DNA from: Octopus bimaculoides
Lineage: Eukaryota
DNA length: 41,032 bases
Assembly: GCF_001194135.2 (NCBI RefSeq)
Contig: NC_068988.1
Location: 68,710,985 to 68,752,016 of the forward strand
Direction of reading: 5' to 3'
This document shows positions 1 to 38,626 of the stretch, in pieces (the stretch's first letter is position 1; every line of letters starts with the position of its first letter). Position numbers and translations under genes: made by a program. The notes beneath the pieces are model-generated. The model did no database searches. It had not been told where the DNA came from and worked only from the letters and a program-made list of their open reading frames with translations.

Positions 1-340
1 TCTAGGAATGATAAAAAAAGGTACTGAAACTTATTTGAAAATGATACCAGGCTTACCATCCCTACAGGAAGTGCAAAAAATCGTGCTAAGTGGAACGACT
101 CATGTACTGAGAAGAGCATTATCGCTGTGAAAACAACATCCATTCATGAATTTGAATTTTTTTTTTTTTTAAATACATGTTTTACCTCTGAATTTGCGTG
201 TGTAAACTGGGAATGCCTACAACGAGTTTCTTTGCCCTAGGTGTACGGCGGAAAACACTCGGCGAGAAATGGAAGAAAATTTGAAGAAAGAAGAAAAAAA
301 CAACATAATAATGATAATAATAATGATAATAATAATAATC
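1..340 (+). mobile_element. 3' end of an R4/Dong-clade (RLE-type) non-LTR retrotransposon: ORF C-terminus, 3' UTR and (TAA)n tail
   Basis: 2-130 translates LGMIKKGTETYLKMIPGLPSLQEVQKIVLSGTTHVLRRALSL*, matching the R4/Dong C-terminal pattern (LG...lQK.vl.gT..ilRr.L*). An imperfect (TAA/AAT)n tail follows at ~305-339. Confidence 0.8.
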
Positions 341-574: not shown

Positions 575-594
575 AATTAGTATATCCCATAACT
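575..594 (+). repeat. Left copy of a 20-bp direct repeat (candidate target-site duplication)
   Basis: aattagtatatcccataact (575-594) vs aattggtatatcccatcact (1532-1551): 18/20 identical. Confidence 0.65.
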
Positions 595-654
595 AACATC
601 GTTGTATAGGGTGACTATATAAGCAATGTGTTCGGAGGCAATGGTGGGTTAGAT

Positions 655-703
655 GAGTACTGAAGAAGAGGTAACAACCTACGAAACATGGCATATACTC
701 TCT
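655..703 (+). ncRNA. Type I hammerhead ribozyme fold, stem III partly decayed
   Basis: Stem I is gagta (655-659)/tactc (696-700), extended by aga/tct. Core CTGAAGA 660-666. Stem II is G-C plus agg/cct around loop taacaa. GAAA at 683-686 and U16.1-H17 = TA at 694-695. Stem III c-a-tgg-c-a is restored by two CpA->CpG reversions. TATATAAG lies upstream at 616-623. Confidence 0.6.
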
Positions 704-734
704 TCTACTTTCTGTTTTTTTTTCTCTGTCAATG

Positions 735-1482
735 CCGGAGAGGTGAGGGGAGTTGAGCGCCAATCACTTATAAAATTCCCCAGTGGCCTGCGCAAGACCT
801 ATCCCCAGACAGTGAAGCCCAACGCTTTCGCCAATCCAACAGGAGAAGAGTGGGAAAAGGTATCTGGTGCCTTCAAATAACCAGTTGTCCGGGTAGGTTG
901 TACTCGTTAGCCTTGGATAGCAAGCAGCCTAGAAAGGACACTCTGAGTTCAAACCTAGAGGAACAAGTCCCCTGCCGCCTTGATAGACTACACTGACAGA
1001 GATGGTGTCTCAATAAAAATACCAGTTGGTAGTAACCTAAAAACACACGTTATTTGGGAGTGAAAATGCCAAGTAAAATAGATAACGACAACGGTGTGAA
1101 CGGGACTGGAACCAATGGTGAAGGTACCACACCTAACAGGTGCCGAACTGTGCAGCAGGGTGGGCTGGGTCGTAATCCAGTCACTGCTAGCCATGCTACA
1201 AAACATAAGTGGAGTAAACAAGTAAACATGATGGTTATGGAGGGTTACTACCGAGGCAGTCCACTGAAAGTATAAGCTTCCAGCTACCAGCATGGCTGAA
1301 AAAGATTGCAAATGTGCAAATGTGAAGGCAGAACAACTACAAAAATCTGCATTGCTTGGAACTGCAAGAATTCTTCGCAGGGTTCTTGAAGCATGAGCAG
1401 TAAACAAGTGTCACCTTAGTCTGCTGGCTGTGGATAGCTAACGCTTTCCATCATACCCAGCAAAATAAACTAGAGTTTTTTC

Positions 1483-1521
<39 letters not shown>

Positions 1522-1529
1522 TAATAATA
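735..1529 (+). mobile_element. Internally deleted R4/Dong-clade element: 5' UTR and ORF N-terminus fused to ORF C-terminus, 3' UTR and (TAA)n tail
   Basis: ATG at 1066 leads to ...HATKHKWSKQVNMMVMEGYYRGSPLK, the R4/Dong N-terminal KW...N..vM.cYY.s.P motif. At ~1270 it joins SISFQLPAWLKKIANVKAEQLQKSALLGTARILRRVLEA* (stop 1394-1396; an 8-bp duplication caaatgtg shifts the frame). (TAA)n tail at 1486-1529. The 5' boundary is approximate. Confidence 0.75.
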
Positions 1530-1531
1530 CT

Positions 1532-1551
1532 AATTGGTATATCCCATCACT
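1532..1551 (+). repeat. Right copy of the 20-bp direct repeat (candidate TSD)
   Basis: Lies immediately after the (TAA)n tail; 18/20 match to 575-594. Confidence 0.65.
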
Positions 1552-1567
1552 ATTATTATTATTATTA

Positions 1568-2980
1568 TTCTGCTTGGCATTGACACTTTTACCTGACATG
1601 CTAAACAGAACTGGATGCGGATACAAATGTTACGGCAAAATAATCAGCCACCTCTTATATATGGATGACCTAAAACTATACGCTACAAACGATAAACAGC
1701 TGGAAACATTACTACAGACAGTATATGGATTTACCAAAGAAATAGATAAGAAATTTGGATTAGGAAAATGTGCCAAAGCAACCCTTAAAAGAGGAAAACT
1801 AGTTAAGAGTAGCAACATCACACTAGATAAAGCCAATGAAATAAGAGAACTAGACGAAAACCAGCCATACAAATATTTAGGAGTCAATGAACTAGATAGG
1901 ATACAATACACACAAATGAAAGAAAAAATAAAGAATACTATAGACGAGTTAGATCAATACTAAAAACAGAGCTCAATGCTAAAAACAAGATAATAGGTAT
2001 TAACACTTTAGCCGTCCCAGTTATAAGTTACAGCTACAATATCCTTAACTGGACACTATACGAACTATCTAAAATAGACAGGAAAACAAGAAAAATAACG
2101 ACAGGATCTAGGATGCACCACCCAAAATCTGACATAGAAAGGCTATATATACAACGTGCAGAAGGTGGTAGGGGTCTTATACAGCTTGAAAACTATTATA
2201 AAATAACCACCATAGGACTGCAAAAATATCTCCTTCAGAAGTAAGGAGAACTAATACAAATAGCCACAAAACATGAGCAAAACAAAAATCTGTTTTCAGT
2301 ATTTAAGGAAGCTGACAAATACAAACAAGAAATCATACTACCTAACAAATAGGAAGAAGTAGAAGAATCAACAAAACTTATAGAACAAATGAAATCCAAA
2401 CTAAACCTAGAACAGCAACGGACCATGAAAAAAAGATGGCAAGAAAAGCCCCTTCATGGGAAATACTGGGCTAAATTAAATGCAAAACAAATAGACAGAG
2501 AAAATCCCAGCAATTGATGAGAAGCTCAGGACTCAAAGCAGAGATGGAAGGATTTTTAATTGCAAGCACAAGACCAAAGCCTCCCCACCAGAAATTACCA
2601 AAAATATATAATGAAAATAAACATAACAAGTAACTGCAGAATATGTGGAGATGGACCAGAAACAATAAATCATATTATCTCTGGCTGCCCAGTGTTGGCT
2701 AAGAAGGAATATATTCACAGACACTATGGAATAACAACAGAAAAAGATGGTATGGATACACACCAAAAAAGGTCACAGAAAACGAGAAAGCAACCATACT
2801 CTGGGATATGCCAATACACACAGATAGAGAAATTAAGGCCAATAGGCCAGATATAGTTGTCAGAGATCAGGAAGAAAAACAATACTTTCTAATTCATGTA
2901 TCAATACTAGCAGATGACAACGTTTCCCTAAAAGAAATGGAGAAATTTCAAAATACAAAGACCTGGAAATAGAGGTAACT
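1568..2980 (+). mobile_element. R4/Dong-clade non-LTR retrotransposon fragment (RT C-terminal half, CCHC finger, RLE endonuclease), truncated at both ends and pseudogenised
   Basis: FCLALTLLPDMLNRTGCGY...ISHLLYMDDLKLYA (YMDD ~1660-1671), FGLGKCA, YKYLGV, CRICGDGPETINHIISGCPVLAKKEYIHRH (~2635-2722), RPDIV (~2845) and KYKDLEIEVT (to 2980). Several stops and frameshifts. Confidence 0.9.
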
Positions 2981-3565
2981 GGTGTTTGGGGTGATCACTA
3001 GTGATGGCGATGATATGCTTCCATTCATCTTCCCACACGGCCTCAGACTCAACAGGGTAGCCTACGTTAAGTGCCTGGAGGAGGTAGCGCTACCCTGGCC
3101 CAATAGAGTGGCTAATGGAGGACGCTATGTCTGGCAACAGGACTCTGCGTCATGCCACACACGCAAGAGAACCCAGTCATGGTTATCAGACGATTTCTAC
3201 GACCATATCACCCCTAATATCTGGCTATCTGACTCCTCAGACTGCAACCTCCTTGATTATTATGTGTTGGTGCAGTTGAGTGAGAGACCAACAATACTCC
3301 TTGTAACACCAAAGATGATCTGAAGTCAAGGATTATGGCAGCATTAACCAATTTAAACTAGGAGACCATCCAGGAGATTTGCAGGAGATTCCGAAGTCGT
3401 CTGGAGGCCGTGGTTGAAACTAATGGAGATTTTATTGAATAAATTTACTCGTTTGTATTTCAAGATATGTTTCATGTAATTTTGGCGAATATATCTCTTA
3501 AAATGAGATGTCAGCGTTATTTCCGTTTATGTGTAACTTAGACAACAGTTTATTCACCGCACCTG
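2981..3565 (+). mobile_element. 3' part of a Tc1/mariner-superfamily DNA transposon, DD37D (maT) family
   Basis: VFGVITSDGDDMLPFIF...YVWQQDSASCHT...DCNLLDYYV, with 37 residues between the QQD aspartate and the final D. The C-terminus RFRSRLEAVVETNGDFIE* ends near 3440. Probable right TIR remnant ends ...caccgcacctg at ~3565. Confidence 0.85.
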
Positions 3566-4217: not shown

Positions 4218-4600
4218 TTGCAAGACTAAAGAATATATTAGAATCATAATAGCAAAAGTATTCAACAATAATGTACAAAATAAGATTTTTTCTTCTCACG
4301 TACTAACCGGTTTCGCTATTGCTTTCCAAATTTTAGTTTTGGATGCAATTTTGAATTAGACATTTTGTATGCTAGCGGGAATAATTGGTAACCAAGATAT
4401 TTTTCAGTAAAGGGGTGGTAAATCTGTTATTTTTTATATTGGTCTACATTTGATTCTGGCTTATATCTTACAATAGATGAGGTAAATCATTAATTTTCAA
4501 TATGGGTTTATAATTAACTCTGGCTTATATATTTCTATAAATGAGGCCTCTTTATTTAGCCGAACTTGTGTTGAGGTCCATATGGAAAATTGATATAATG
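4211..4600 (-). repeat. Inverted pseudo-LTR (left), reverse complement of 6762-7147
   Basis: Hand alignment: the reverse complement starts cattatatcaatt...ggacctcaacacaag and ends ...aaaacaaat, as does 6762-7147. About 13 differences in the first ~100 aligned nt. Confidence 0.92.
4295..4338 (-). ncRNA. Degenerate minimal hammerhead ribozyme in the left pLTR
   Basis: Minus strand reads ...aaat TTGGAAA GC AATA GC GAAA CCGG TT agtac...: GAAA core, 2-bp stem II and palindromic ACCGGT stem III. The CTGANGA box is mutated. Confidence 0.45.
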
Positions 4601-6761
4601 GTAAGATTAGGAGTTGTGGTTGCACGGGAGAAAGCGAAGGTAATTAACCTGTCACATCAATCTCTATCAACAATCCTATCTAAAGGGCTAAAATTTGCCC
4701 CAACGCCACACGATACTAACCAAAATAAGATCAAAGACAGTGTATCAGAATTCTTCAAGAAATTAAGGCTTTCAGAAGCACTGACCAATTACAATAGCGA
4801 AGATGATTCACTAGTCAAAAACAGAAGTCAACACATCTCCCATAAAGAAAGAAATAAAAATCTCAACGAATTCTGCTACCACATTGAAAACTTCACTCAC
4901 TTCATCTTGCACAAAAAATCATTTCAAACTTAGCACCACCGAATGGAAAGAACTAACTGAACAACAAAACAACGAAGAAATAACAATCACAGAAGCATAT
5001 AAAGGGAGTGCAGTAGTGGTAACGGACACATTTTATTACAAAAATCTAGTAACATCCATAAAAAATAACGACGAACACTACGAAAAAATCAATGATTACA
5101 CCTCACGAAAATAATGAAAATCCTCTTTACACTAATCCAAACCTACGGAAAAGACCTAACAAAAAAGAGAAGTAGACTATTTAACAATTTTTTAAATGTA
5201 AACCTAGCCTATTCTATGGTCTACCGAAAATTCACAAAAGCCAAACTATAAAAGAAACCATCAAAAAATCACCAAAGGCATATATACATACACCAGCACC
5301 AGGAGACCTAAAATTATGGCTCATTCTAACTGGACAATCCTGTAAAATACATAGATAAAATTGCCTCATAAACATTCCTCCTGAAACCATTTCTAAAATA
5401 CATCAAAAGTTATAGTAGAGATGATTTAGATATGTTAAATCACCGACAAGAAAAGGTCAAAGAAGAAACAGTCATGGTTTCATTTGATGTGATAAACATC
5501 TACACTAACATACCTCATAATTATGCAATAGAAGCAATCCGGGTCTGGCTGGAAAAATATCCAGAAGAAATACCAGAATGGATCAACAAAGATTTCATAA
5601 TCGAAACACTAAAATTCATCCTTCAAAACAACCATGCTATGTTTGATACCACTGTTTATCGCCAAGAATTCGGAATTGCCATCGGAACTAGGGCAGCTCT
5701 GACTATTACCACTCTAACAATGGGCTATTTAGAAATAAAAATATATCAGGAGTCATTTTCAAAAGTTAGAAGCCCTCTTTCCCAATACATAAAAGAACAT
5801 TGGAAAGATTTTTGGACGACTGCTTCATCCTCTGGAATGAAAACATGGATAAACTCATGGAGTTCAGAAGACTCCTTAATAGCATTAACACCAACATACA
5901 ATTTACAATGGAACACAACCAAGAGTAACTCTCGTTCCAAGATATACTGGTTAAAAAATGAACAAAAAAACAGAAGCGGACATCTTTTACAAAGCCACAG
6001 ATGCTAAACAATATCTATTATTTAGCTCATGTCACCCGAGATATATCAAAACAAAAATCCCCTTCAACCTTGCAAGAAGGATTTGCACCATAGTGTCCGA
6101 GAAAACACCAGAGAACTAAGATTGCATGAGCTTAAAAACGTACTCCAGGATAGAAACTACCAAATTCAACTCATAAATGATGGGATTATACGTGCAAAAT
6201 CGATTGACATGAAAACATTAAGAAAAGTCGAACTACATACCTACTCTGAAAACACTACCTTATATTTCCACATACAACCCATGAAACAACGAAGTTTTAA
6301 CATCATTGTCAAAAATCTCCCAATAATCCGTATTGACCCCAAACTGAACGAAATTCTACGTACCCATAAAATCAATAAAGGTACTAAACAACCAAAGACA
6401 TTAAAGAAGATCCTCCCAAATGCTAACTTATTCTCAAGAATAACGGACGCAAGAGTAAAACATTGTGGTTGTCCTAACTGCGGAACATATCCCATTCATT
6501 TGGAAGGTTCAGAATTCCATTTCAGACAAGGGCAAAAATTCAAACTTAAATCCAACTTCTCTTGCGCCTCTGAAAAGCTCATTTATGTAAGCAGATGCTT
6601 GGGCTGTCATAAAAATTATATAGAGTCCGCAGGAGTGTCGGTCAGACGGAGATGCATAGTCCGCAGACAACAGGTACCTTTCCCACAATATCACTAAATA
6701 TTTCTCAGTGAACACATTGACAGATGTGCAGAACAACTTCAACCGCAATTCTTAAACTTAA

Positions 6762-7147
6762 CATTATATCAATTTGCTATTCGGACCTCAACACAAGTAC
6801 GATTAAATAAAGAGGCATCATTTATCGAAAAAATATAAGCCAGAATTAATTATAAATCCATATTGAAAATTAAAGATTTACCCCATGTATTTTAAGATAT
6901 AAGCCAGAACTAAATGTAAAAATATCAAAAATAACAGATTTACCACCCCTTTACTAAAAAATACCTTGGTTACCAAATATCCCTTCTAGCAAACAGAATG
7001 TCTAATTCAGAATTGCATCCAAACTCAAAATTTGAAAAGCGATAGCGAAGCCGGTTATTATGATGGCAGAAAAAATCTAATCTTGTGCAATATTGTATAA
7101 TATTTTTGTTATGATTCTAATATATCCTTTACTCTTGTAAAACAAAT
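6762..7147 (+). repeat. Pseudo-LTR (right): end of ORF plus 3' UTR
   Basis: Reverse complement of 4211-4600. Confidence 0.92.
7024..7064 (+). ncRNA. Degenerate minimal hammerhead ribozyme in the right pLTR
   Basis: ctcaaaat TTGAAAA GC GATA GC GAAG CCGG TT attatgat. Stem I pairs 6/8 and the core is an apparent decay of CTGAAGA...GAAA. Minimal hammerheads with a palindromic stem III are established PLE pLTR features. Confidence 0.5.
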
Positions 7148-11717: not shown

Positions 11718-11961
11718 CATACATACATACATACACACACACANNNNNNNNNNNNNNNNNNNNNNNNNNNNNNNNNNNNNNNNNNTATATATATATACGC
11801 ATATACATATATACGCATATACATATATACATATATATACATATATATACACATATATATATATATATACATACATATATATATATATATACGCATATAC
11901 ATATATACATATATATACATATATATACACACATATATATATATACATACATATATATATA
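11718..11961. repeat. Compound (CATA)/(CA)/(TA) microsatellite containing an assembly gap (N 11744-11785)
   Basis: Directly visible. Confidence 0.97.
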
Positions 11962-12442: not shown

Positions 12443-12789
12443 TGCTGAAAAAGTCTATCATAGGTATCTAGAAGTATTTCGTCATTGAGCTGGTAGATAT
12501 ATATTGAAACGATAACAAACAAGCAAACCTTTTGACATTATTCAGGAAAATTTAATTTATAATGTAAACATAGTACAGAGTAGTGAAAATAAATATTTAA
12601 AGCCTCTTACAGCTGTTTCTAGATAAAGAAGCATGTGGATCATATGTTATTGAGTAAATAACTCTACGTAAACTAAGTATTCCAATATCGGAGCGAAAGA
12701 AAAAAAAGAGAATATATAGAGACGTAGAATATCCTCAGTGGAGAAGATTAATAGTTACCAGCTTTTCGAAAAGACTAGCAATGTCTCGA

Positions 12790-12890
12790 GTGCCTAAAAG
12801 ATACTTGCTCAAAATGCCACTTAGTAGAACTGAACTGGGAAACATCTGGTTAGGAGGCAAAATTCTTACCGCACAACCACACCTGCACCT
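12790..12890 (-). mobile_element. Degenerate SINE head (family of 12339-12442)
   Basis: gatacttgctcaaaatgccacttagtagaactgaac...cttaccgcacaaccacacctgcacct aligns to 31030-31118. Confidence 0.6.
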
Positions 12891-14682: not shown

Positions 14683-14765
<83 letters not shown>

Positions 14766-15376
14766 NNNNNNNNNNNNNNNNNNNNNNNNNNNNNNNNNNN
14801 NNNNNNNNNNNNNNNNNNNNNNNNNNNNNNNNNNNNNNNNNNNNNNNNNNNNNNNNNNNNNNNNNNNNNNNNNNNNNNNNNNNNNNNNNNNNNNNNNNNN
14901 NNNNNNNNNNNNNNNNNNNNNNNNNNNNNNNNNNNNNNNNNNNNNNNNNNNNNNNNNNNNNNNNNNNNNNNNNNNNNNNNNNNNNNNNNNNNNNNNNNNN
15001 NNNNNNNNNNNNNNNNNNNNNNNNNNNNNNNNNNNNNNNNNNNNNNNNNNNNNNNNNNNNNNNNNNNNNNNNNNNNNNNNNNNNNNNNNNNNNNNNNNNN
15101 NNNNNNNNNNNNNNNNNNNNNNNNNNNNNNNNNNNNNNNNNNNNNNNNNNNNNNNNNNNNNNNNNNNNNNNNNNNNNNNNNNNNNNNNNNNNNNNNNNNN
15201 NNNNNNNNATATATGTATATATATGTATGTATATATATGTATGGATATATATATATATATACATATGTGTATATATATATATGTATATATATATGTATGT
15301 ATATATATGTATGGACATATATATATATATATACATATATATGTGTGTGTGTATTTATGTATGTATATATATGTAT
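14683..15376. repeat. (TA)n(TG)n and compound TA/TG microsatellite spanning an assembly gap (N 14766-15208)
   Basis: Directly visible. Confidence 0.97.
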
Positions 15377-30755: not shown

Positions 30756-31119
30756 TATTCTTTTACTTGTTTCAGTTATTTTACTGCGGCCTTTAGTCGA
30801 ACAAATAGGCCCCCAGCACTTATTTTTGTAAGCCTGGTACTTATTCTATCGGTCTCTTTTGTCGAAGCACTAGGTTACGGTGGCTTAAACACACCAACAT
30901 TGGTTGTCAAGCGATGGTGGAGAGACTAACACACACACACACATACATATATACGACGGGCTTCTTTCAGTTTCTGTCCGCCAAATCTACCCGCAAGGTT
31001 TTGGTTGGCCCGAGGCTATAGTAAACGACAATTGCCCAGGGTGCCACGCAATGGGATTGAACCCGGAACCATGTAGTTGGGAAGCAAGCTTCTTACCACA
31101 CGGCCACTCCTGAACCTAT
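30756..31119 (-). mobile_element. Full-length tRNA-derived SINE with CORE-like domain and internal (TG)n tract
   Basis: Minus strand head ataggttcaggagtggccgtgtgg...ggttccgggttcaatccc, matching 12339-12442 and 34229-34333. The 3' part matches 11305-11500. Confidence 0.9.
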
Positions 31120-34228: not shown

Positions 34229-34333
34229 GGCTATAGTAGAAGACACTTGCCCAAGGTGCTACGCAGTGGGACTGATCCTGGAACCATGAGGTTGGGAAAC
34301 AAGCTTCTTACCACACAGCACGCCTGCGCCTAT
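34229..34333 (-). mobile_element. tRNA-derived SINE head; the rest is hidden in gap N 34129-34228
   Basis: Reverse complement of 12339-12442 with few differences. Confidence 0.88.
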
Positions 34334-34747: not shown

Positions 34748-34960
34748 GGTAATTTGTAATTCATATTGATAGCTTTTAAATTTTAGGCTAAAATATAGTT
34801 TAAAAAATTTGGAAATTTCACATCATTGAAATATATACAGAATATTATAGCTCTTTGTCCTCTTAATGGCTTAAAATCTTAATATAATTCTTCTCTTGAA
34901 AAGCTTTTACGAAAATTTTGTAAATTAAAGTATCCTCAATGTTTTTTCCCTTTTCTTTAA

Positions 34961-35408
34961 NNNNNNNNNNNNNNNNNNNNNNNNNNNNNNNNNNNNNNNN
35001 NNNNNNNNNNNNNNNNNNNNNNNNNNNNNNNNNNNNNNNNNNNNNNNNNNNNNNNNNNNNNNNNNNNNNNNNNNNNNNNNNNNNNNNNNNNNNNNNNNNN
35101 NNNNNNNNNNNNNNNNNNNNNNNNNNNNNNNNNNNNNNNNNNNNNNNNNNNNNNNNNNNNNNNNNNNNNNNNNNNNNNNNNNNNNNNNNNNNNNNNNNNN
35201 NNNNNNNNNNNNNNNNNNNNNNNNNNNNNNNNNNNNNNNNNNNNNNNNNNNNNNNNNNNNNNNNNNNNNNNNNNNNNNNNNNNNNNNNNNNNNNNNNNNN
35301 NNNNNNNNNNNNNNNNNNNNNNNNNNNNNNNNNNNNNNNNNNNNNNNNNNNNNNNNNNNNNNNNNNNNNNNNNNNNNNNNNNNNNNNNNNNNNNNNNNNN
35401 NNNNNNNN

Positions 35409-35456
<48 letters not shown>

Positions 35457-37310: not shown

Positions 37311-38626
37311 TCTGGTCATCCCATAAGTTTTGTCCGAATTATGACTTCCTTCCATCTATTTACAGGCCTTTTAATCCCACCAATGTAAAACTTGGTTTCA
37401 AAGCAAAGAACTCTGCAATGTCAGTTTCGACCTCCTCCTGGCTTGCGAAATTTATGTCCCCCAAATGNNNNNNNNNNNNNNNNNNNNNNNNNNNNNNNNN
37501 NNNNNNNNNNNNNNNNNNNNNNNNNNNNNNNNNNNNNNNNNNNNNNNNNNNNNNNNNNNNNNNNNNNNNNNNNNNNNNNNNNNNNNNNNNNNNNNNNNNN
37601 NNNNNNNNNNNNNNNNNNNNNNNNNNNNNNNNNNNNNNNNNNNNNNNNNNNNNNNNNNNNNNNNNNNNNNNNNNNNNNNNNNNNNNNNNNNNNNNNNNNN
37701 NNNNNNNNNNNNNNNGATGAAACATCACTCCTTTTCGATTCACTAAAGCGGGTCTTTTTCCTTCAAAGCTTGGTTCAAACTCTCTAATTGCTGATAGTAG
37801 ACTTGAGCATTGATTGTTGCATTAGGTGGTAACAATTCAAAGTGAATTATTCCTTTGCAATCCCACCAGATAGAGAGAAGAACCTTTTTCCCATGAATTT
37901 CCCTTCTCGGTTGTGGTTGAGCTTTTTCCCTTTTACCAAGCCACTGTTTACGACGTTTAACATTTTGATAGAAGATCCATTTTTCGTCACTAGACACAAG
38001 TCTATCCAAAAAGGGTGAAATGAGTTAGCGATGAGAGAAGAGCAGATGTCAACTCGGGATTTGCGGTTGCTTTCGGACAATTCATGAGGCACCCATTGTC
38101 CAAGTTTAGGAATCTTTCTAAATTGTTCAAGATGACGATGAATAGTTGTATGGTTTGAACTAAGCTTTATTGTCAATTCTTCAACTGATAATGCAGGATT
38201 TCCTTCAAGTTATGTCCTCAAGGAGCTTATCATCAAACTCAACAGGACGTCCTGTTCGATCTTCGTCTTCAAGACTGAAATTTCCACTTTTGAATTTTGC
38301 AAACCATCTTCTGCAAGTTCTTTCATTCAAGCATTCTTTCCCAATAAACTGAGTGTATGTTTCGAGTCGCTTTGGTTACAGAGTTTCCTTTTTTGTACTC
38401 ATAAAGTATTATATGCCTTAAATGCTCTTTGTATGCTTCCATGTTAGAAAGGGTTTTAATCAAAGAAGTATTTATTCTATTATTCTGTCAAATAATATTT
38501 AATTAGTTTAAATGTACACAAATGAATAAAAATAACTTTTAATTTCATTAGACATTCTAAAATACTATCAAATTTCATTTGATTTTAAAAAAGTTAAAAT
38601 CGGACAAGACTTATGGGATGACCTGA
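37311..38626 (-). mobile_element. Mariner transposon (DD34D-type) with both TIRs and a TA TSD; transposase frameshifted
   Basis: TIRs are TA|tctggtcatcccataagttttgtccga (37311-) and tcggacaagacttatgggatgacctga|TA (-38626). From ATG 38442 on the minus strand: MEAYKEHLRHIILYEY...RWFAKFKSG...GRP...WVPHEL...DEKW...KVLLSIWWD. At least three frameshifts. The second and third catalytic Asp fall in gap N 37468-37715, so DD34D is inferred from the WVPHEL/DEKW motifs. Confidence 0.93.

What the first reader, a model, noticed from the sequence alone, without database searches (positions are those of the whole stretch)
575..1551. TSD-bounded ~937-bp composite retro-unit: TATA box + hammerhead + internally deleted R4/Dong + (TAA)n tail
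Seen: an 18/20 direct repeat (575-594 and 1532-1551) brackets a unit that ends in a (TAA)n tail. In order the unit holds TATATAAG (616-623), a hammerhead fold (655-703), an R4-type 5' UTR and ORF start, and a direct fusion at ~1270 to the last ~40 codons and 3' UTR, so the RT and RLE are gone. Established: R2/R4/RTE 5' ends are associated with HDV-like ribozymes, whereas hammerheads are typical of Penelope pLTRs and retrozymes. Inference: this may be a non-autonomous, ribozyme-headed SINE-like family mobilised in trans by R4/Dong, or a one-off PLE-pLTR/R4 chimera made by template switching or read-through.
Basis: partly seen in the sequence, partly recalled or inferred. Interest (0 to 1): 0.7.

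Follow-up and report, generated by a model that had tools for sequence, protein, structure and literature searches.

The report
Internally deleted Dong LINE copy with foreign head
A 936-bp insert flanked by a 21-bp duplication is a dead, gutted copy of a Dong/R4-type jumping gene that carries about 240 bp of unrelated sequence at its front, including a hammerhead-ribozyme-like motif of doubtful activity; it is most likely a single chimeric copying accident, not a new class of mobile element.

Summary
The sequence features are real. A 19/21 direct repeat (575-595 / 1532-1552; never above 16/21 in 3,000 shuffles) brackets a 936-bp insert ending in (TAA)~16.

Positions 833-1531 are an internally deleted R4/Dong-clade LINE. 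It keeps a 5' UTR with a hairpin that covaries across distant relatives, the first 69 codons, then, out of frame, the last 42 codons, the 3' UTR and the tail. About 3 kb (RT, CCHC, endonuclease) is missing. The junction (1268-1278) is where related copies continue into the full ORF.

The first 237 bp (596-832) match nothing in any relative I could fetch. They hold a hammerhead-like motif (655-700) with a complete core, a G10.1-C11.1 pair and 5-bp helices I and II (0 of 1,500 shuffles match). Against it: helix III is one pair with a non-palindromic loop, Rfam finds nothing, and a competing hairpin is 8-10 kcal/mol more stable. TATATAAG is not distinctive: such octamers occur about every 1.4 kb here.

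Best reading: a one-off, SIDE-like chimeric retrocopy (template jump or read-through) mobilised in trans by a Dong-type RT. A ribozyme-headed family is untested and mechanistically awkward, because a type I hammerhead is cut away from its own downstream product. Copy number in the source genome could not be examined.

The parts
575..595 (+). Left copy of the target-site duplication (AATTAGTATATCCCATAACTA)
   Evidence: 19/21 identical to 1532-1552; 0 of 3,000 shuffles reach 19, maximum 16
596..832 (+). Orphan 5' head, not shared with any related Dong-like copy
   Evidence: No homology to L006/L007 upstream sequence, to the first 188 nt of L011-type 5' UTRs, to any fetched locus, or to the rest of the window. 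No tRNA. Fold z-score -0.77, so not rod-like
616..623 (+). TATATAAG octamer (TATA-like)
   Evidence: Present, but TATAWAAR occurs 30 times in the window against 19 expected. It lies inside the copied unit, so it cannot have driven the template RNA
655..700 (+). Hammerhead-like motif, type I topology. Helix I: 655-659/696-700. Core: CUGAAGA 660-666. Extra A667. Helix II: G668-C682 and 669-672/677-680, with A681 bulged. GAAA: 683-686. A686-U694. Predicted cleavage between 695 and 696
   Evidence: Only match in the window to relaxed and PLE-type descriptors; 0 matches in 1,500 dinucleotide shuffles. No Rfam hit. Hammerhead fold -4.3 to -5.9 kcal/mol against an MFE of -13.9; pair probabilities <=0.004
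833..1065 (+). Dong/R4-type 5' UTR
   Evidence: 72% identical to L006/L007 from 833 onward. nhmmer matches a profile of L011-type UTRs at 890-935 and 972-1065
896..929 (+). Conserved 5' UTR hairpin: 6-bp stem 896-901/924-929 and 3-bp stem 913-915/921-923, with an 11-nt 5' bulge carrying the near-invariant UUAGCC. A degenerate second copy of the module lies at about 960-1000
   Evidence: 7-sequence alignment A2: 95% of cells paired, 3 pairs with changes on both sides, 0 of 500 shuffles reach the observed score, slid controls 40-60% paired. Duplication seen by nhmmer
1066..1275 (+). Remnant of the element's ORF: the first 69 codons, then a stop created at the deletion junction
   Evidence: Translation. 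97 homologues at E<=1e-3; relatives continue past '..ECYYRS.P' into a Myb-like region (PMC7998251)
1268..1278 (+). Internal deletion junction; about 3 kb of ORF removed
   Evidence: Homology to L006/L007 ends at 1268 while those copies continue. C-terminal homology starts within a few codons. The full-length relative has about 3.4 kb from ATG to stop
1268..1396 (+). Last 42 codons of the ORF plus the stop codon, in a different frame from 1066-1275
   Evidence: Translation ends ..EQLQKSALLGTARILRRVLEA*. Similar to P0001/P0002 and to the L009, L011 and L018 C-termini
1397..1484 (+). 3' UTR
   Evidence: Lies between the stop codon and the tail. No homologue retrieved
1485..1531 (+). (TAA)n / (ATA)n tail
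   Evidence: TRF period 3, 16.7 copies, 91% matches. (TAA)n is the Dong target and tail (PMC7998251, PMC3774820)
1532..1552 (+). Right copy of the target-site duplication (AATTGGTATATCCCATCACTA)

Best explanation
One target-primed reverse-transcription event inserted a chimeric, non-coding RNA of about 936 nt. This created the 21-bp duplication.

The 3' 700 nt of that RNA came from a Dong/R4-clade LINE that had lost about 3 kb of its interior. That makes it a 'short internally deleted element': 5' UTR with its conserved hairpin, 69 N-terminal codons, 42 C-terminal codons, 3' UTR and (TAA)n. Because it kept the 3' UTR and tail, a Dong-type RT made elsewhere could use it in trans (inferred).

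The 5' 237 nt are foreign to the LINE. They were joined in one of two ways (inferred; the two are not distinguished). [quoted passage not shown]

The foreign piece carries a hammerhead-like motif that may be a relic of a Penelope-type or retrozyme hammerhead. It played no part in making this copy, because the copy spans the predicted cleavage site uncut. The copy is now dead: it has no RT, and the frame is broken.
For: The TSD and tail are statistically solid. Both ends of the Dong part match the two ends of full-length relatives. Those relatives' RT is closest to solved R2 proteins, with a CCHC zinc finger and no APE domain. The deletion breakpoint is mapped by L006/L007. The head is absent from the closest relatives and from every other fetched sequence. 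There is no second copy in the 41-kb window. Neither the junction-spanning ORFs nor anything near-identical is in the protein collections. An independent N-terminus/C-terminus fusion with a different breakpoint exists in another organism as a singleton, so such deletions recur as accidents. Precedent: R2 SIDEs, R2/R1 hybrid SIDEs, and U12 or tRNA sequences joined to R2 5' ends by template jumps (PMC3414825); U6/L1 chimeras (PMC4476161).
Against: The source genome could not be searched, so 'one-off' rests on absence from limited data. The exact 5' end of the cephalopod-type Dong family is not known, so the head/LINE boundary (about 815-833) is approximate. This insertion is not in a (TAA)n target, unlike the relatives L008, L009 and L011, so use of a Dong-type endonuclease is not proven. 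The hammerhead-like motif is rarer than chance (0 of 1,500 shuffles), which leaves room for a functional link.
Confidence: 0.55

Rival explanations
1. One reading: the unit is one member of a multi-copy, SINE-like non-autonomous family. Its head supplies a promoter and a hammerhead that trims the 5' end. Its Dong 3' end recruits the Dong RT.
For: The unit keeps exactly the parts a trans-mobilised element needs, and it has been mobilised at least once (TSD). The hammerhead-like motif has a full core, G10.1-C11.1 and two 5-bp helices, and is not matched in 1,500 shuffles. SIDE families exist in the R2 superfamily (PMC3414825).
Against: There is no second copy in the window. No protein in the 1.84-billion representative library carries the junction-specific ORF end; the closest is 63% identical and not deleted. 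Related copies lack the head. A type I hammerhead stays on the 5' fragment, so processed RNA (696 onward) could not pass it on. This copy starts 100 nt upstream of the cleavage site and 20 nt upstream of the TATA-like octamer, so neither shaped its template. The hammerhead fold has <=0.4% ensemble probability, helix III is 1 bp, and there is no Rfam hit.
Confidence: 0.12
2. The head is simply the native, lineage-specific 5' part of the 5' UTR of this genome's Dong subfamily. The unit is then a plain internally deleted full-length copy, and the hammerhead-like motif is chance or incidental.
For: LINE 5' UTRs are modular. The first 188 nt of the L011-type UTR likewise has no counterpart in the unit. 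The unit is a full-length-looking copy with a TSD.
Against: L006/L007, 72% identical across 833-1268, show no similarity upstream of 833; the alignment score is below the shuffle mean. A 470-nt UTR would be about 190 nt longer than those of full-length relatives.
Confidence: 0.2
3. The 21-bp repeat is not a TSD. The region is a patchwork of separate insertions or rearrangements among three neighbouring Dong-like copies.
For: The area is a cluster of same-strand Dong-like fragments (1-340, 596-1531, 1568-2975) and microsatellites.
Against: The repeat abuts the tail end exactly and is far beyond chance. No alternative boundary or second repeat was found.
Confidence: 0.05

Closest known systems
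[quoted passage not shown]
   Same: (TAA)n tail. The N-terminal ORF is homologous to elements whose RT is closest to R2, with a C-terminal CCHC and no APE domain. Relatives sit in (TAA)n and form head-to-tail arrays. The literature gives (TAA)n as the Dong target in molluscs (PMC7998251).
   Different: RT, zinc finger and endonuclease are deleted. This copy is not inserted in (TAA)n. The HDV-like 5' ribozyme reported for Dong and R4 (PMC3774820) was not recognisable.
SIDEs, short internally deleted elements of R2, and R2/R1 hybrid SIDEs (PMC3414825)
   Same: The 5' end plus the 3' end of an RLE-type LINE are joined by an internal deletion and mobilised in trans. The same paper documents foreign RNA (U12, tRNA) attached to R2 5' ends by template jumps.
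   Different: SIDEs are multi-copy and keep an active HDV-like ribozyme at their very 5' end. Here copy number is unknown, and the 5' end is a 237-nt orphan segment with a hammerhead-like motif.
Chimeric retrocopies made by LINE RT template switching (U6/L1 chimeras, PMC4476161; tripartite chimeras, PMC2104539)
   Same: A second RNA is fused 5' of a LINE-derived part, and the whole is bounded by one TSD.
   Different: The second RNA here is unidentified. A read-through (5' transduction) origin is equally possible.
Penelope-like-element minimal hammerheads and metazoan retrozymes (PMC4209133, PMC7229834)
   Same: Type I topology; an extra nucleotide between A9 and 10.1; a G10.1-C11.1 pair; a short helix I (5 bp); a very short helix III.
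   Different: Positions 15.2-16.2 and loop 3 are not palindromic, so no dimeric helix III can form. There is no tandem or second copy, no PLE ORF or pLTR context and no rod-like fold. Helix II is shorter, with a bulge.

Membership tests
R4/Dong-clade LINE (as a deleted derivative) | ORF ends homologous to elements with an R2-type RT, a C-terminal CCHC and restriction-like endonuclease, and no APE domain | tested here: met
   N-terminus: 97 homologues, including P0007 in tandem full-length elements of L011. The L011 RT is closest to solved R2 proteins (E 2.6e-25 against 1e-11 for L1). RVT_1 and zf-RVT are found, with no Exo_endo_phos. C-terminus.
R4/Dong-clade LINE (as a deleted derivative) | RT and endonuclease present in the copy itself (autonomy) | tested here: not met
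   Only 69 + 42 codons remain, and they are out of frame. About 3 kb is missing relative to L011.
R4/Dong-clade LINE (as a deleted derivative) | (TAA)n 3' tail | tested here: met
   1485-1534, 16.7 copies.
R4/Dong-clade LINE (as a deleted derivative) | Insertion into a (TAA)n target | tested here: not met
   The 5' junction follows a unique 21-bp TSD, not (TAA)n. Only a (TAT)6 tract on the same strand lies just downstream. Relatives L008, L009, L011 and L014-L019 do follow (TAA)n.
R4/Dong-clade LINE (as a deleted derivative) | HDV-like self-cleaving ribozyme at the exact 5' end (PMC3774820) | tested here: inconclusive
   No Rfam HDV-like match at E<=10. My descriptor hits 896-1030, and the P1-like stem covaries. 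However, the P1.1/L3 features are inconsistent, and in L011 the module lies about 190 nt inside the element.
Hammerhead ribozyme (type I / PLE minimal type) | Conserved core: C3 U4 G5 A6 N7 G8 A9, G12 A13 A14, A15.1-U16.1, H17 | tested here: met
   660-666 CUGAAGA, 683-685 GAA, A686-U694, A695.
Hammerhead ribozyme (type I / PLE minimal type) | Helices I and II flanking the core, with a G10.1-C11.1 pair | tested here: met
   Helix I has 5 bp. Helix II has 5 bp with G668-C682, provided A667 is the extra nucleotide typical of PLE hammerheads and A681 is bulged (PMC4209133). 0 of 1,500 shuffles match.
Hammerhead ribozyme (type I / PLE minimal type) | Helix III, or a palindromic 15.2-16.2/loop 3 that allows a dimeric helix III | tested here: not met
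   There is one pair only. The loop CAUGGCA is not self-complementary across 15.1-16.1 (read from the sequence; criterion from PMC4209133).
Hammerhead ribozyme (type I / PLE minimal type) | Match to a curated hammerhead covariance model | tested here: not met
   No hammerhead family is listed at gathering score or at E<=10, even for 101 nt.
Hammerhead ribozyme (type I / PLE minimal type) | Conservation or covariation among copies; self-cleavage | not testable with these tools
   No other copy of 596-832 could be retrieved. Cleavage needs a bench assay.
SINE-like / SIDE non-autonomous family | Several copies sharing the same internal junctions, each with its own TSD | not testable with these tools
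   The source genome is not searchable here. Partial negatives: none in the window, the exact ORFs are not on record, and no near-identical ORF is in the representative library.
PLE pLTR / retrozyme | Hammerhead within a tandem or pLTR repeat next to a PLE ORF, or in 170-400-nt tandem, rod-like monomers | tested here: not met
   There is no tandem or second hammerhead-like site in 41 kb. The head has no similarity to the putative PLE at 4.2-7.1 kb. Fold z-score -0.77.

The most novel reading that the evidence does not exclude
The head is a functional module. On this reading a cephalopod Dong-derived SIDE family has replaced or supplemented the clade's HDV-like 5' ribozyme with a Penelope-type hammerhead and is amplified in trans by Dong RT. 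That would be the first hammerhead-headed LINE-dependent element, and a direct physical link between hammerhead-bearing RNAs and a non-PLE reverse transcriptase.
Probability: 0.08. Interest if true: 0.7.

Novelty: new member of a known kind. Interest (0 to 1): 0.3.

Why it matters
As it stands, this is an ordinary product of LINE biology: a dead, internally deleted Dong-type copy with a chimeric 5' end.

It has modest value as a clean example that R4/Dong-clade machinery makes SIDE-like and chimeric copies outside (TAA)n targets, with a 21-bp TSD.

If the head proved to be a hammerhead-bearing PLE or retrozyme RNA, the copy would show that a LINE RT can capture such RNAs. That bears on the open question of who mobilises metazoan retrozymes (PMC7229834).

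The by-product may be more useful: a 5' UTR hairpin of Dong-like elements that covaries across distant animal lineages.

Tried and rejected
(1) I supposed that 341-594 was the upstream RT part of the flanking Dong-like copy, which would have given an internal 'empty site' proof. This was refuted. tblastn with close RT homologues and blastn with their DNA (L012) start only at 1568, and 341-595 scores below the shuffle mean.

(2) Exact look-ups of window ORFs (the 69-aa sense ORF, the 139-aa antisense ORF spanning the junction, and the flank RT ORF) are not on record. A word-index search with the N-terminus found nothing.

(3) The loci of P0001/P0002 come from another animal and have no DNA similarity. 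Their RTs are unrelated types.

(4) A metagenome scan for the hammerhead segment gave 0 hits.

(5) tRNA-derived head: ARAGORN found none.

(6) Retrozyme-like rod structure: fold z-score -0.77.

(7) My first, symmetric hammerhead descriptor made the motif look marginal (about 0.01 per window). After reading the PLE hammerhead criteria, a proper descriptor gave 0 of 1,500, so I raised my estimate. Both descriptors are post hoc.

(8) HDV-like ribozyme: the strict descriptor gave one candidate at homologous sites in the unit and in L011a. The relaxed descriptor at L011-type 5' ends gave many inconsistent hits. Rfam found nothing. This is left unresolved.

(9) A split 13-nt complementarity between 655-682 and 893-905 was judged to be chance-level.

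(10) Pfam gave no support for my by-eye reading of a PLE at 4.5-6.7 kb or a mariner fragment at about 2982-3323.

Full report
SETTING. The window is animal genomic DNA: AT-rich, full of microsatellites, assembly gaps and tRNA-like SINE copies. From memory, the SINE looks cephalopod. The nearest relatives of the element come from Logan assemblies of one set of sequencing runs. I did not establish the species.

OBSERVATION.
- The repeat 575-594 / 1532-1551 is 18/20 and extends to 19/21. In 3,000 shuffles of the upstream 1,485 nt, no 21-mer matched better than 16/21.
- The right copy directly follows a (TAA)/(ATA) array of 16.7 units at 1485-1534.
- The bracketed insert is therefore 596-1531, and the simplest reading is one target-primed reverse-transcription event with a 21-bp TSD.
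- I tried to prove the empty site internally by showing that the two flanks form one continuous older RT gene. That failed. The flanking Dong-like copy starts only at about 1568, and 341-595 has no RT homology.

THE LINE-DERIVED PART.
- The ORF 1066-1275 (69 codons) found nothing in the word-indexed search. It found 97 representatives by exhaustive HMMER.
- Long hits (P0012, P0016, P0050, P0054, P0057) show it is the conserved N-terminus of a LINE ORF that continues '..ECYYRS.P...GYRKRM..'. This is the region reported as a diverged Myb/SANT domain of R4/Dong elements (PMC7998251).
- One hit, P0007, lies in locus L011, where full-length elements stand head to tail. Each begins with AATTGTCC.. 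right after the short (TAA)n tail of the element before it, and each encodes an RVT_1 protein with a zf-RVT CCHC.
- That RT is closest to solved R2 proteins (E 2.6e-25) and much further from L1 ORF2p (1e-11). No APE domain was found.
- Dong-like elements of molluscs, insects and cnidarians target (TAA)n (PMC7998251). A 5'-truncated relative, L008, is indeed preceded by (TAA)8. The R4/Dong label is therefore supported.

THE DELETION.
- Two related copies (L006/L007, 72% identity) align to 833-1268 and then run on into the normal ORF. The window instead continues with '..KLPATSMAEKDCKCANVKAEQLQKSALLGTARILRRVLEA*'.
- That sequence is the typical C-terminal end of these proteins.
- The two remnants are in different frames. 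About 3 kb is missing, compared with about 3.4 kb from ATG to stop in L011.
- A similar N-terminus/C-terminus fusion with a different breakpoint (P0010, locus L009) exists in another organism. It is flanked by (TAA)17 and a 134-bp direct repeat, and it is a singleton cluster. Such deletions therefore arise repeatedly.

THE 5' UTR.
- From 833 to the ATG, the unit matches L006/L007.
- Two blocks (890-935 and 972-1065) match a profile of L011-type UTRs. The second block includes a degenerate duplicate of the first.
- A pattern taken from the conserved block retrieved seven more loci from JGI metagenomes.
- Across seven sequences, a hairpin (unit 896-929) is 95% paired, with three pairs changed on both sides. 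No shuffle of 500 reaches the observed score, and slid registers drop to 40-60% paired.
- Its topology resembles the P1/P2/P3 core of HDV-like ribozymes, which Dong and R4 are reported to carry at their exact 5' ends (PMC3774820). However, the L3/P1.1 features are inconsistent, the module lies about 190 nt inside L011-type elements, and Rfam finds nothing. I leave it as a conserved structured element of unknown role.

THE HEAD (596-832).
- Nothing I could fetch resembles it. That covers the sequence upstream of L006/L007, the first 188 nt of L011-type UTRs, all 19 loci, and the rest of the window.
- It is not tRNA-like and does not fold unusually well.
- The TATA-like octamer is not distinctive: TATAWAAR occurs 30 times in the window (19 expected), roughly once per 1.4 kb. 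It also lies inside the copied unit, so the template RNA must have started upstream of it.

THE HAMMERHEAD-LIKE MOTIF.
- For it: every core nucleotide is present. If A667 is read as the extra nucleotide that PLE hammerheads carry between A9 and 10.1, there is a G10.1-C11.1 pair and a 5-bp helix II (one bulge), plus a 5-bp helix I (criteria from PMC4209133).
- For it: this descriptor matched nowhere else in the window or in 93 kb of other loci, and never in 1,500 dinucleotide shuffles. The bare core pattern alone is expected 0.26 times per window.
- Against it: helix III is one pair with a non-palindromic 7-nt loop, so neither a monomeric nor a dimeric helix III can form.
- Against it: no Rfam hammerhead model matches, even at E<=10 on 101 nt.
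- Against it: the hammerhead fold is worth -4.3 to -5.9 kcal/mol against -13.9 for a competing hairpin that buries the core. Pair probabilities are <=0.004.
- The descriptors were written after seeing the candidate. I put the chance that this derives from a true hammerhead at roughly even, and the chance that it is active now as low.

MECHANISM.
- A type I hammerhead cleaves 3' of its catalytic core, so the downstream product (696 onward) loses the ribozyme. Unlike an HDV-like ribozyme, it cannot be inherited by a LINE-like RNA unless it lies in a terminal repeat, as in PLEs.
- This copy begins 100 nt upstream of the predicted cleavage site. Its template was therefore uncut.
- The head was thus a passenger. 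It was joined either by read-through from upstream of a deleted source copy, or by a template jump of the RT from the LINE RNA's 5' end to another RNA.
- Template jumps that attach U12 or tRNA sequences to R2 5' ends, and internally deleted SIDEs, are documented for the sister clade (PMC3414825). U6/L1 chimeras are the mammalian parallel (PMC4476161).

VERDICT.
- The 'one-off chimera' alternative is the best-supported reading (about 0.55).
- A native, lineage-specific UTR extension is the next most likely (about 0.2).
- A ribozyme-headed family is possible but unsupported (about 0.1).
- The key test is copy counting in the source genome, which could not be run with these tools.

Noticed in passing
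window 896-929 (duplicate module about 960-1000); L006 about 314-347; L011 about 2217-2250 and 6006-6039; L013-L019: A 5' UTR hairpin of Dong-like elements is conserved between the window's element and distant relatives. It has a 6-bp stem, an 11-nt 5' bulge carrying the near-invariant UUAGCC, and a 3-bp UUG/CAA stem. Covariation is clear: 95% paired, 3 pairs changed on both sides, 0 of 500 shuffles. The topology is HDV-ribozyme-like, but it is not at the element's 5' end and matches no Rfam family.
   Followed up: partly
window 1-340: The 3' end of a different Dong-like element on the same strand. The ORF ends ..LQEVQKIVLSGTTHVLRRALSL* at about 128, followed by a 3' UTR unrelated to that of the unit and an (ATAATAATGATA)n tail at 305-339.
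   Followed up: partly
window 1551-2975: A (TAT)6 tract, then a third Dong-like copy. It is 5'-truncated inside the RT (it starts at 'FCLAL', 1568), decayed by frameshifts, 74% identical in DNA to the NCBI contig L012, and retains YMDD, CCHC (zf-RVT) and endonuclease-like motifs. It is cut off near 2975 by what looks by eye like a mariner/Tc1 transposase fragment (2982-3430; no Pfam hit).
   Followed up: partly
window 4246-7115: 195-nt inverted repeats (84% complementary) flank ORFs 4541-6697. By eye these resemble a Penelope-like RT plus a GIY-YIG endonuclease. Pfam gave no hit, and neither descriptor found a hammerhead there.
   Followed up: partly
L009 2530-3530: An independent internally deleted Dong-like element in another organism. 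It has an in-frame N-terminus/C-terminus fusion of 103 aa, lies after (TAA)17 and is flanked by a direct repeat of about 134 bp. That suggests a very long TSD, reminiscent of the long TSDs cited for R9 elements.
   Followed up: partly
protein P0003 and its cluster (ENA contigs of 260 kb and 2.3 Mb): Proteins made of up to seven in-frame tandem copies of the roughly 83-aa Dong N-terminal region. This indicates that the 5' end of a Dong-like element has been amplified into a satellite-like array in some organism.
   Followed up: no
L011 1-9600; L014, L015, L019: Full-length Dong-like elements of different subfamilies stand head to tail. Each 5' end (AATTGTCC.. / TTGTCC..) begins immediately after the short (TAA)n tail of the previous element, as expected if the tails are themselves the target.
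   Followed up: partly
window 12787-12877, 31014-31104, 34229-34319: Three copies (65-86% identity) of a roughly 90-nt tRNA-like SINE.
   Followed up: no
window about 11744-11785, 14760-15210, 34960-35410, 37470-37720: Runs of N (assembly gaps) sit inside (TA)n/(CA)n-rich stretches. ORFs and repeats reported across them are artefacts.
   Followed up: no
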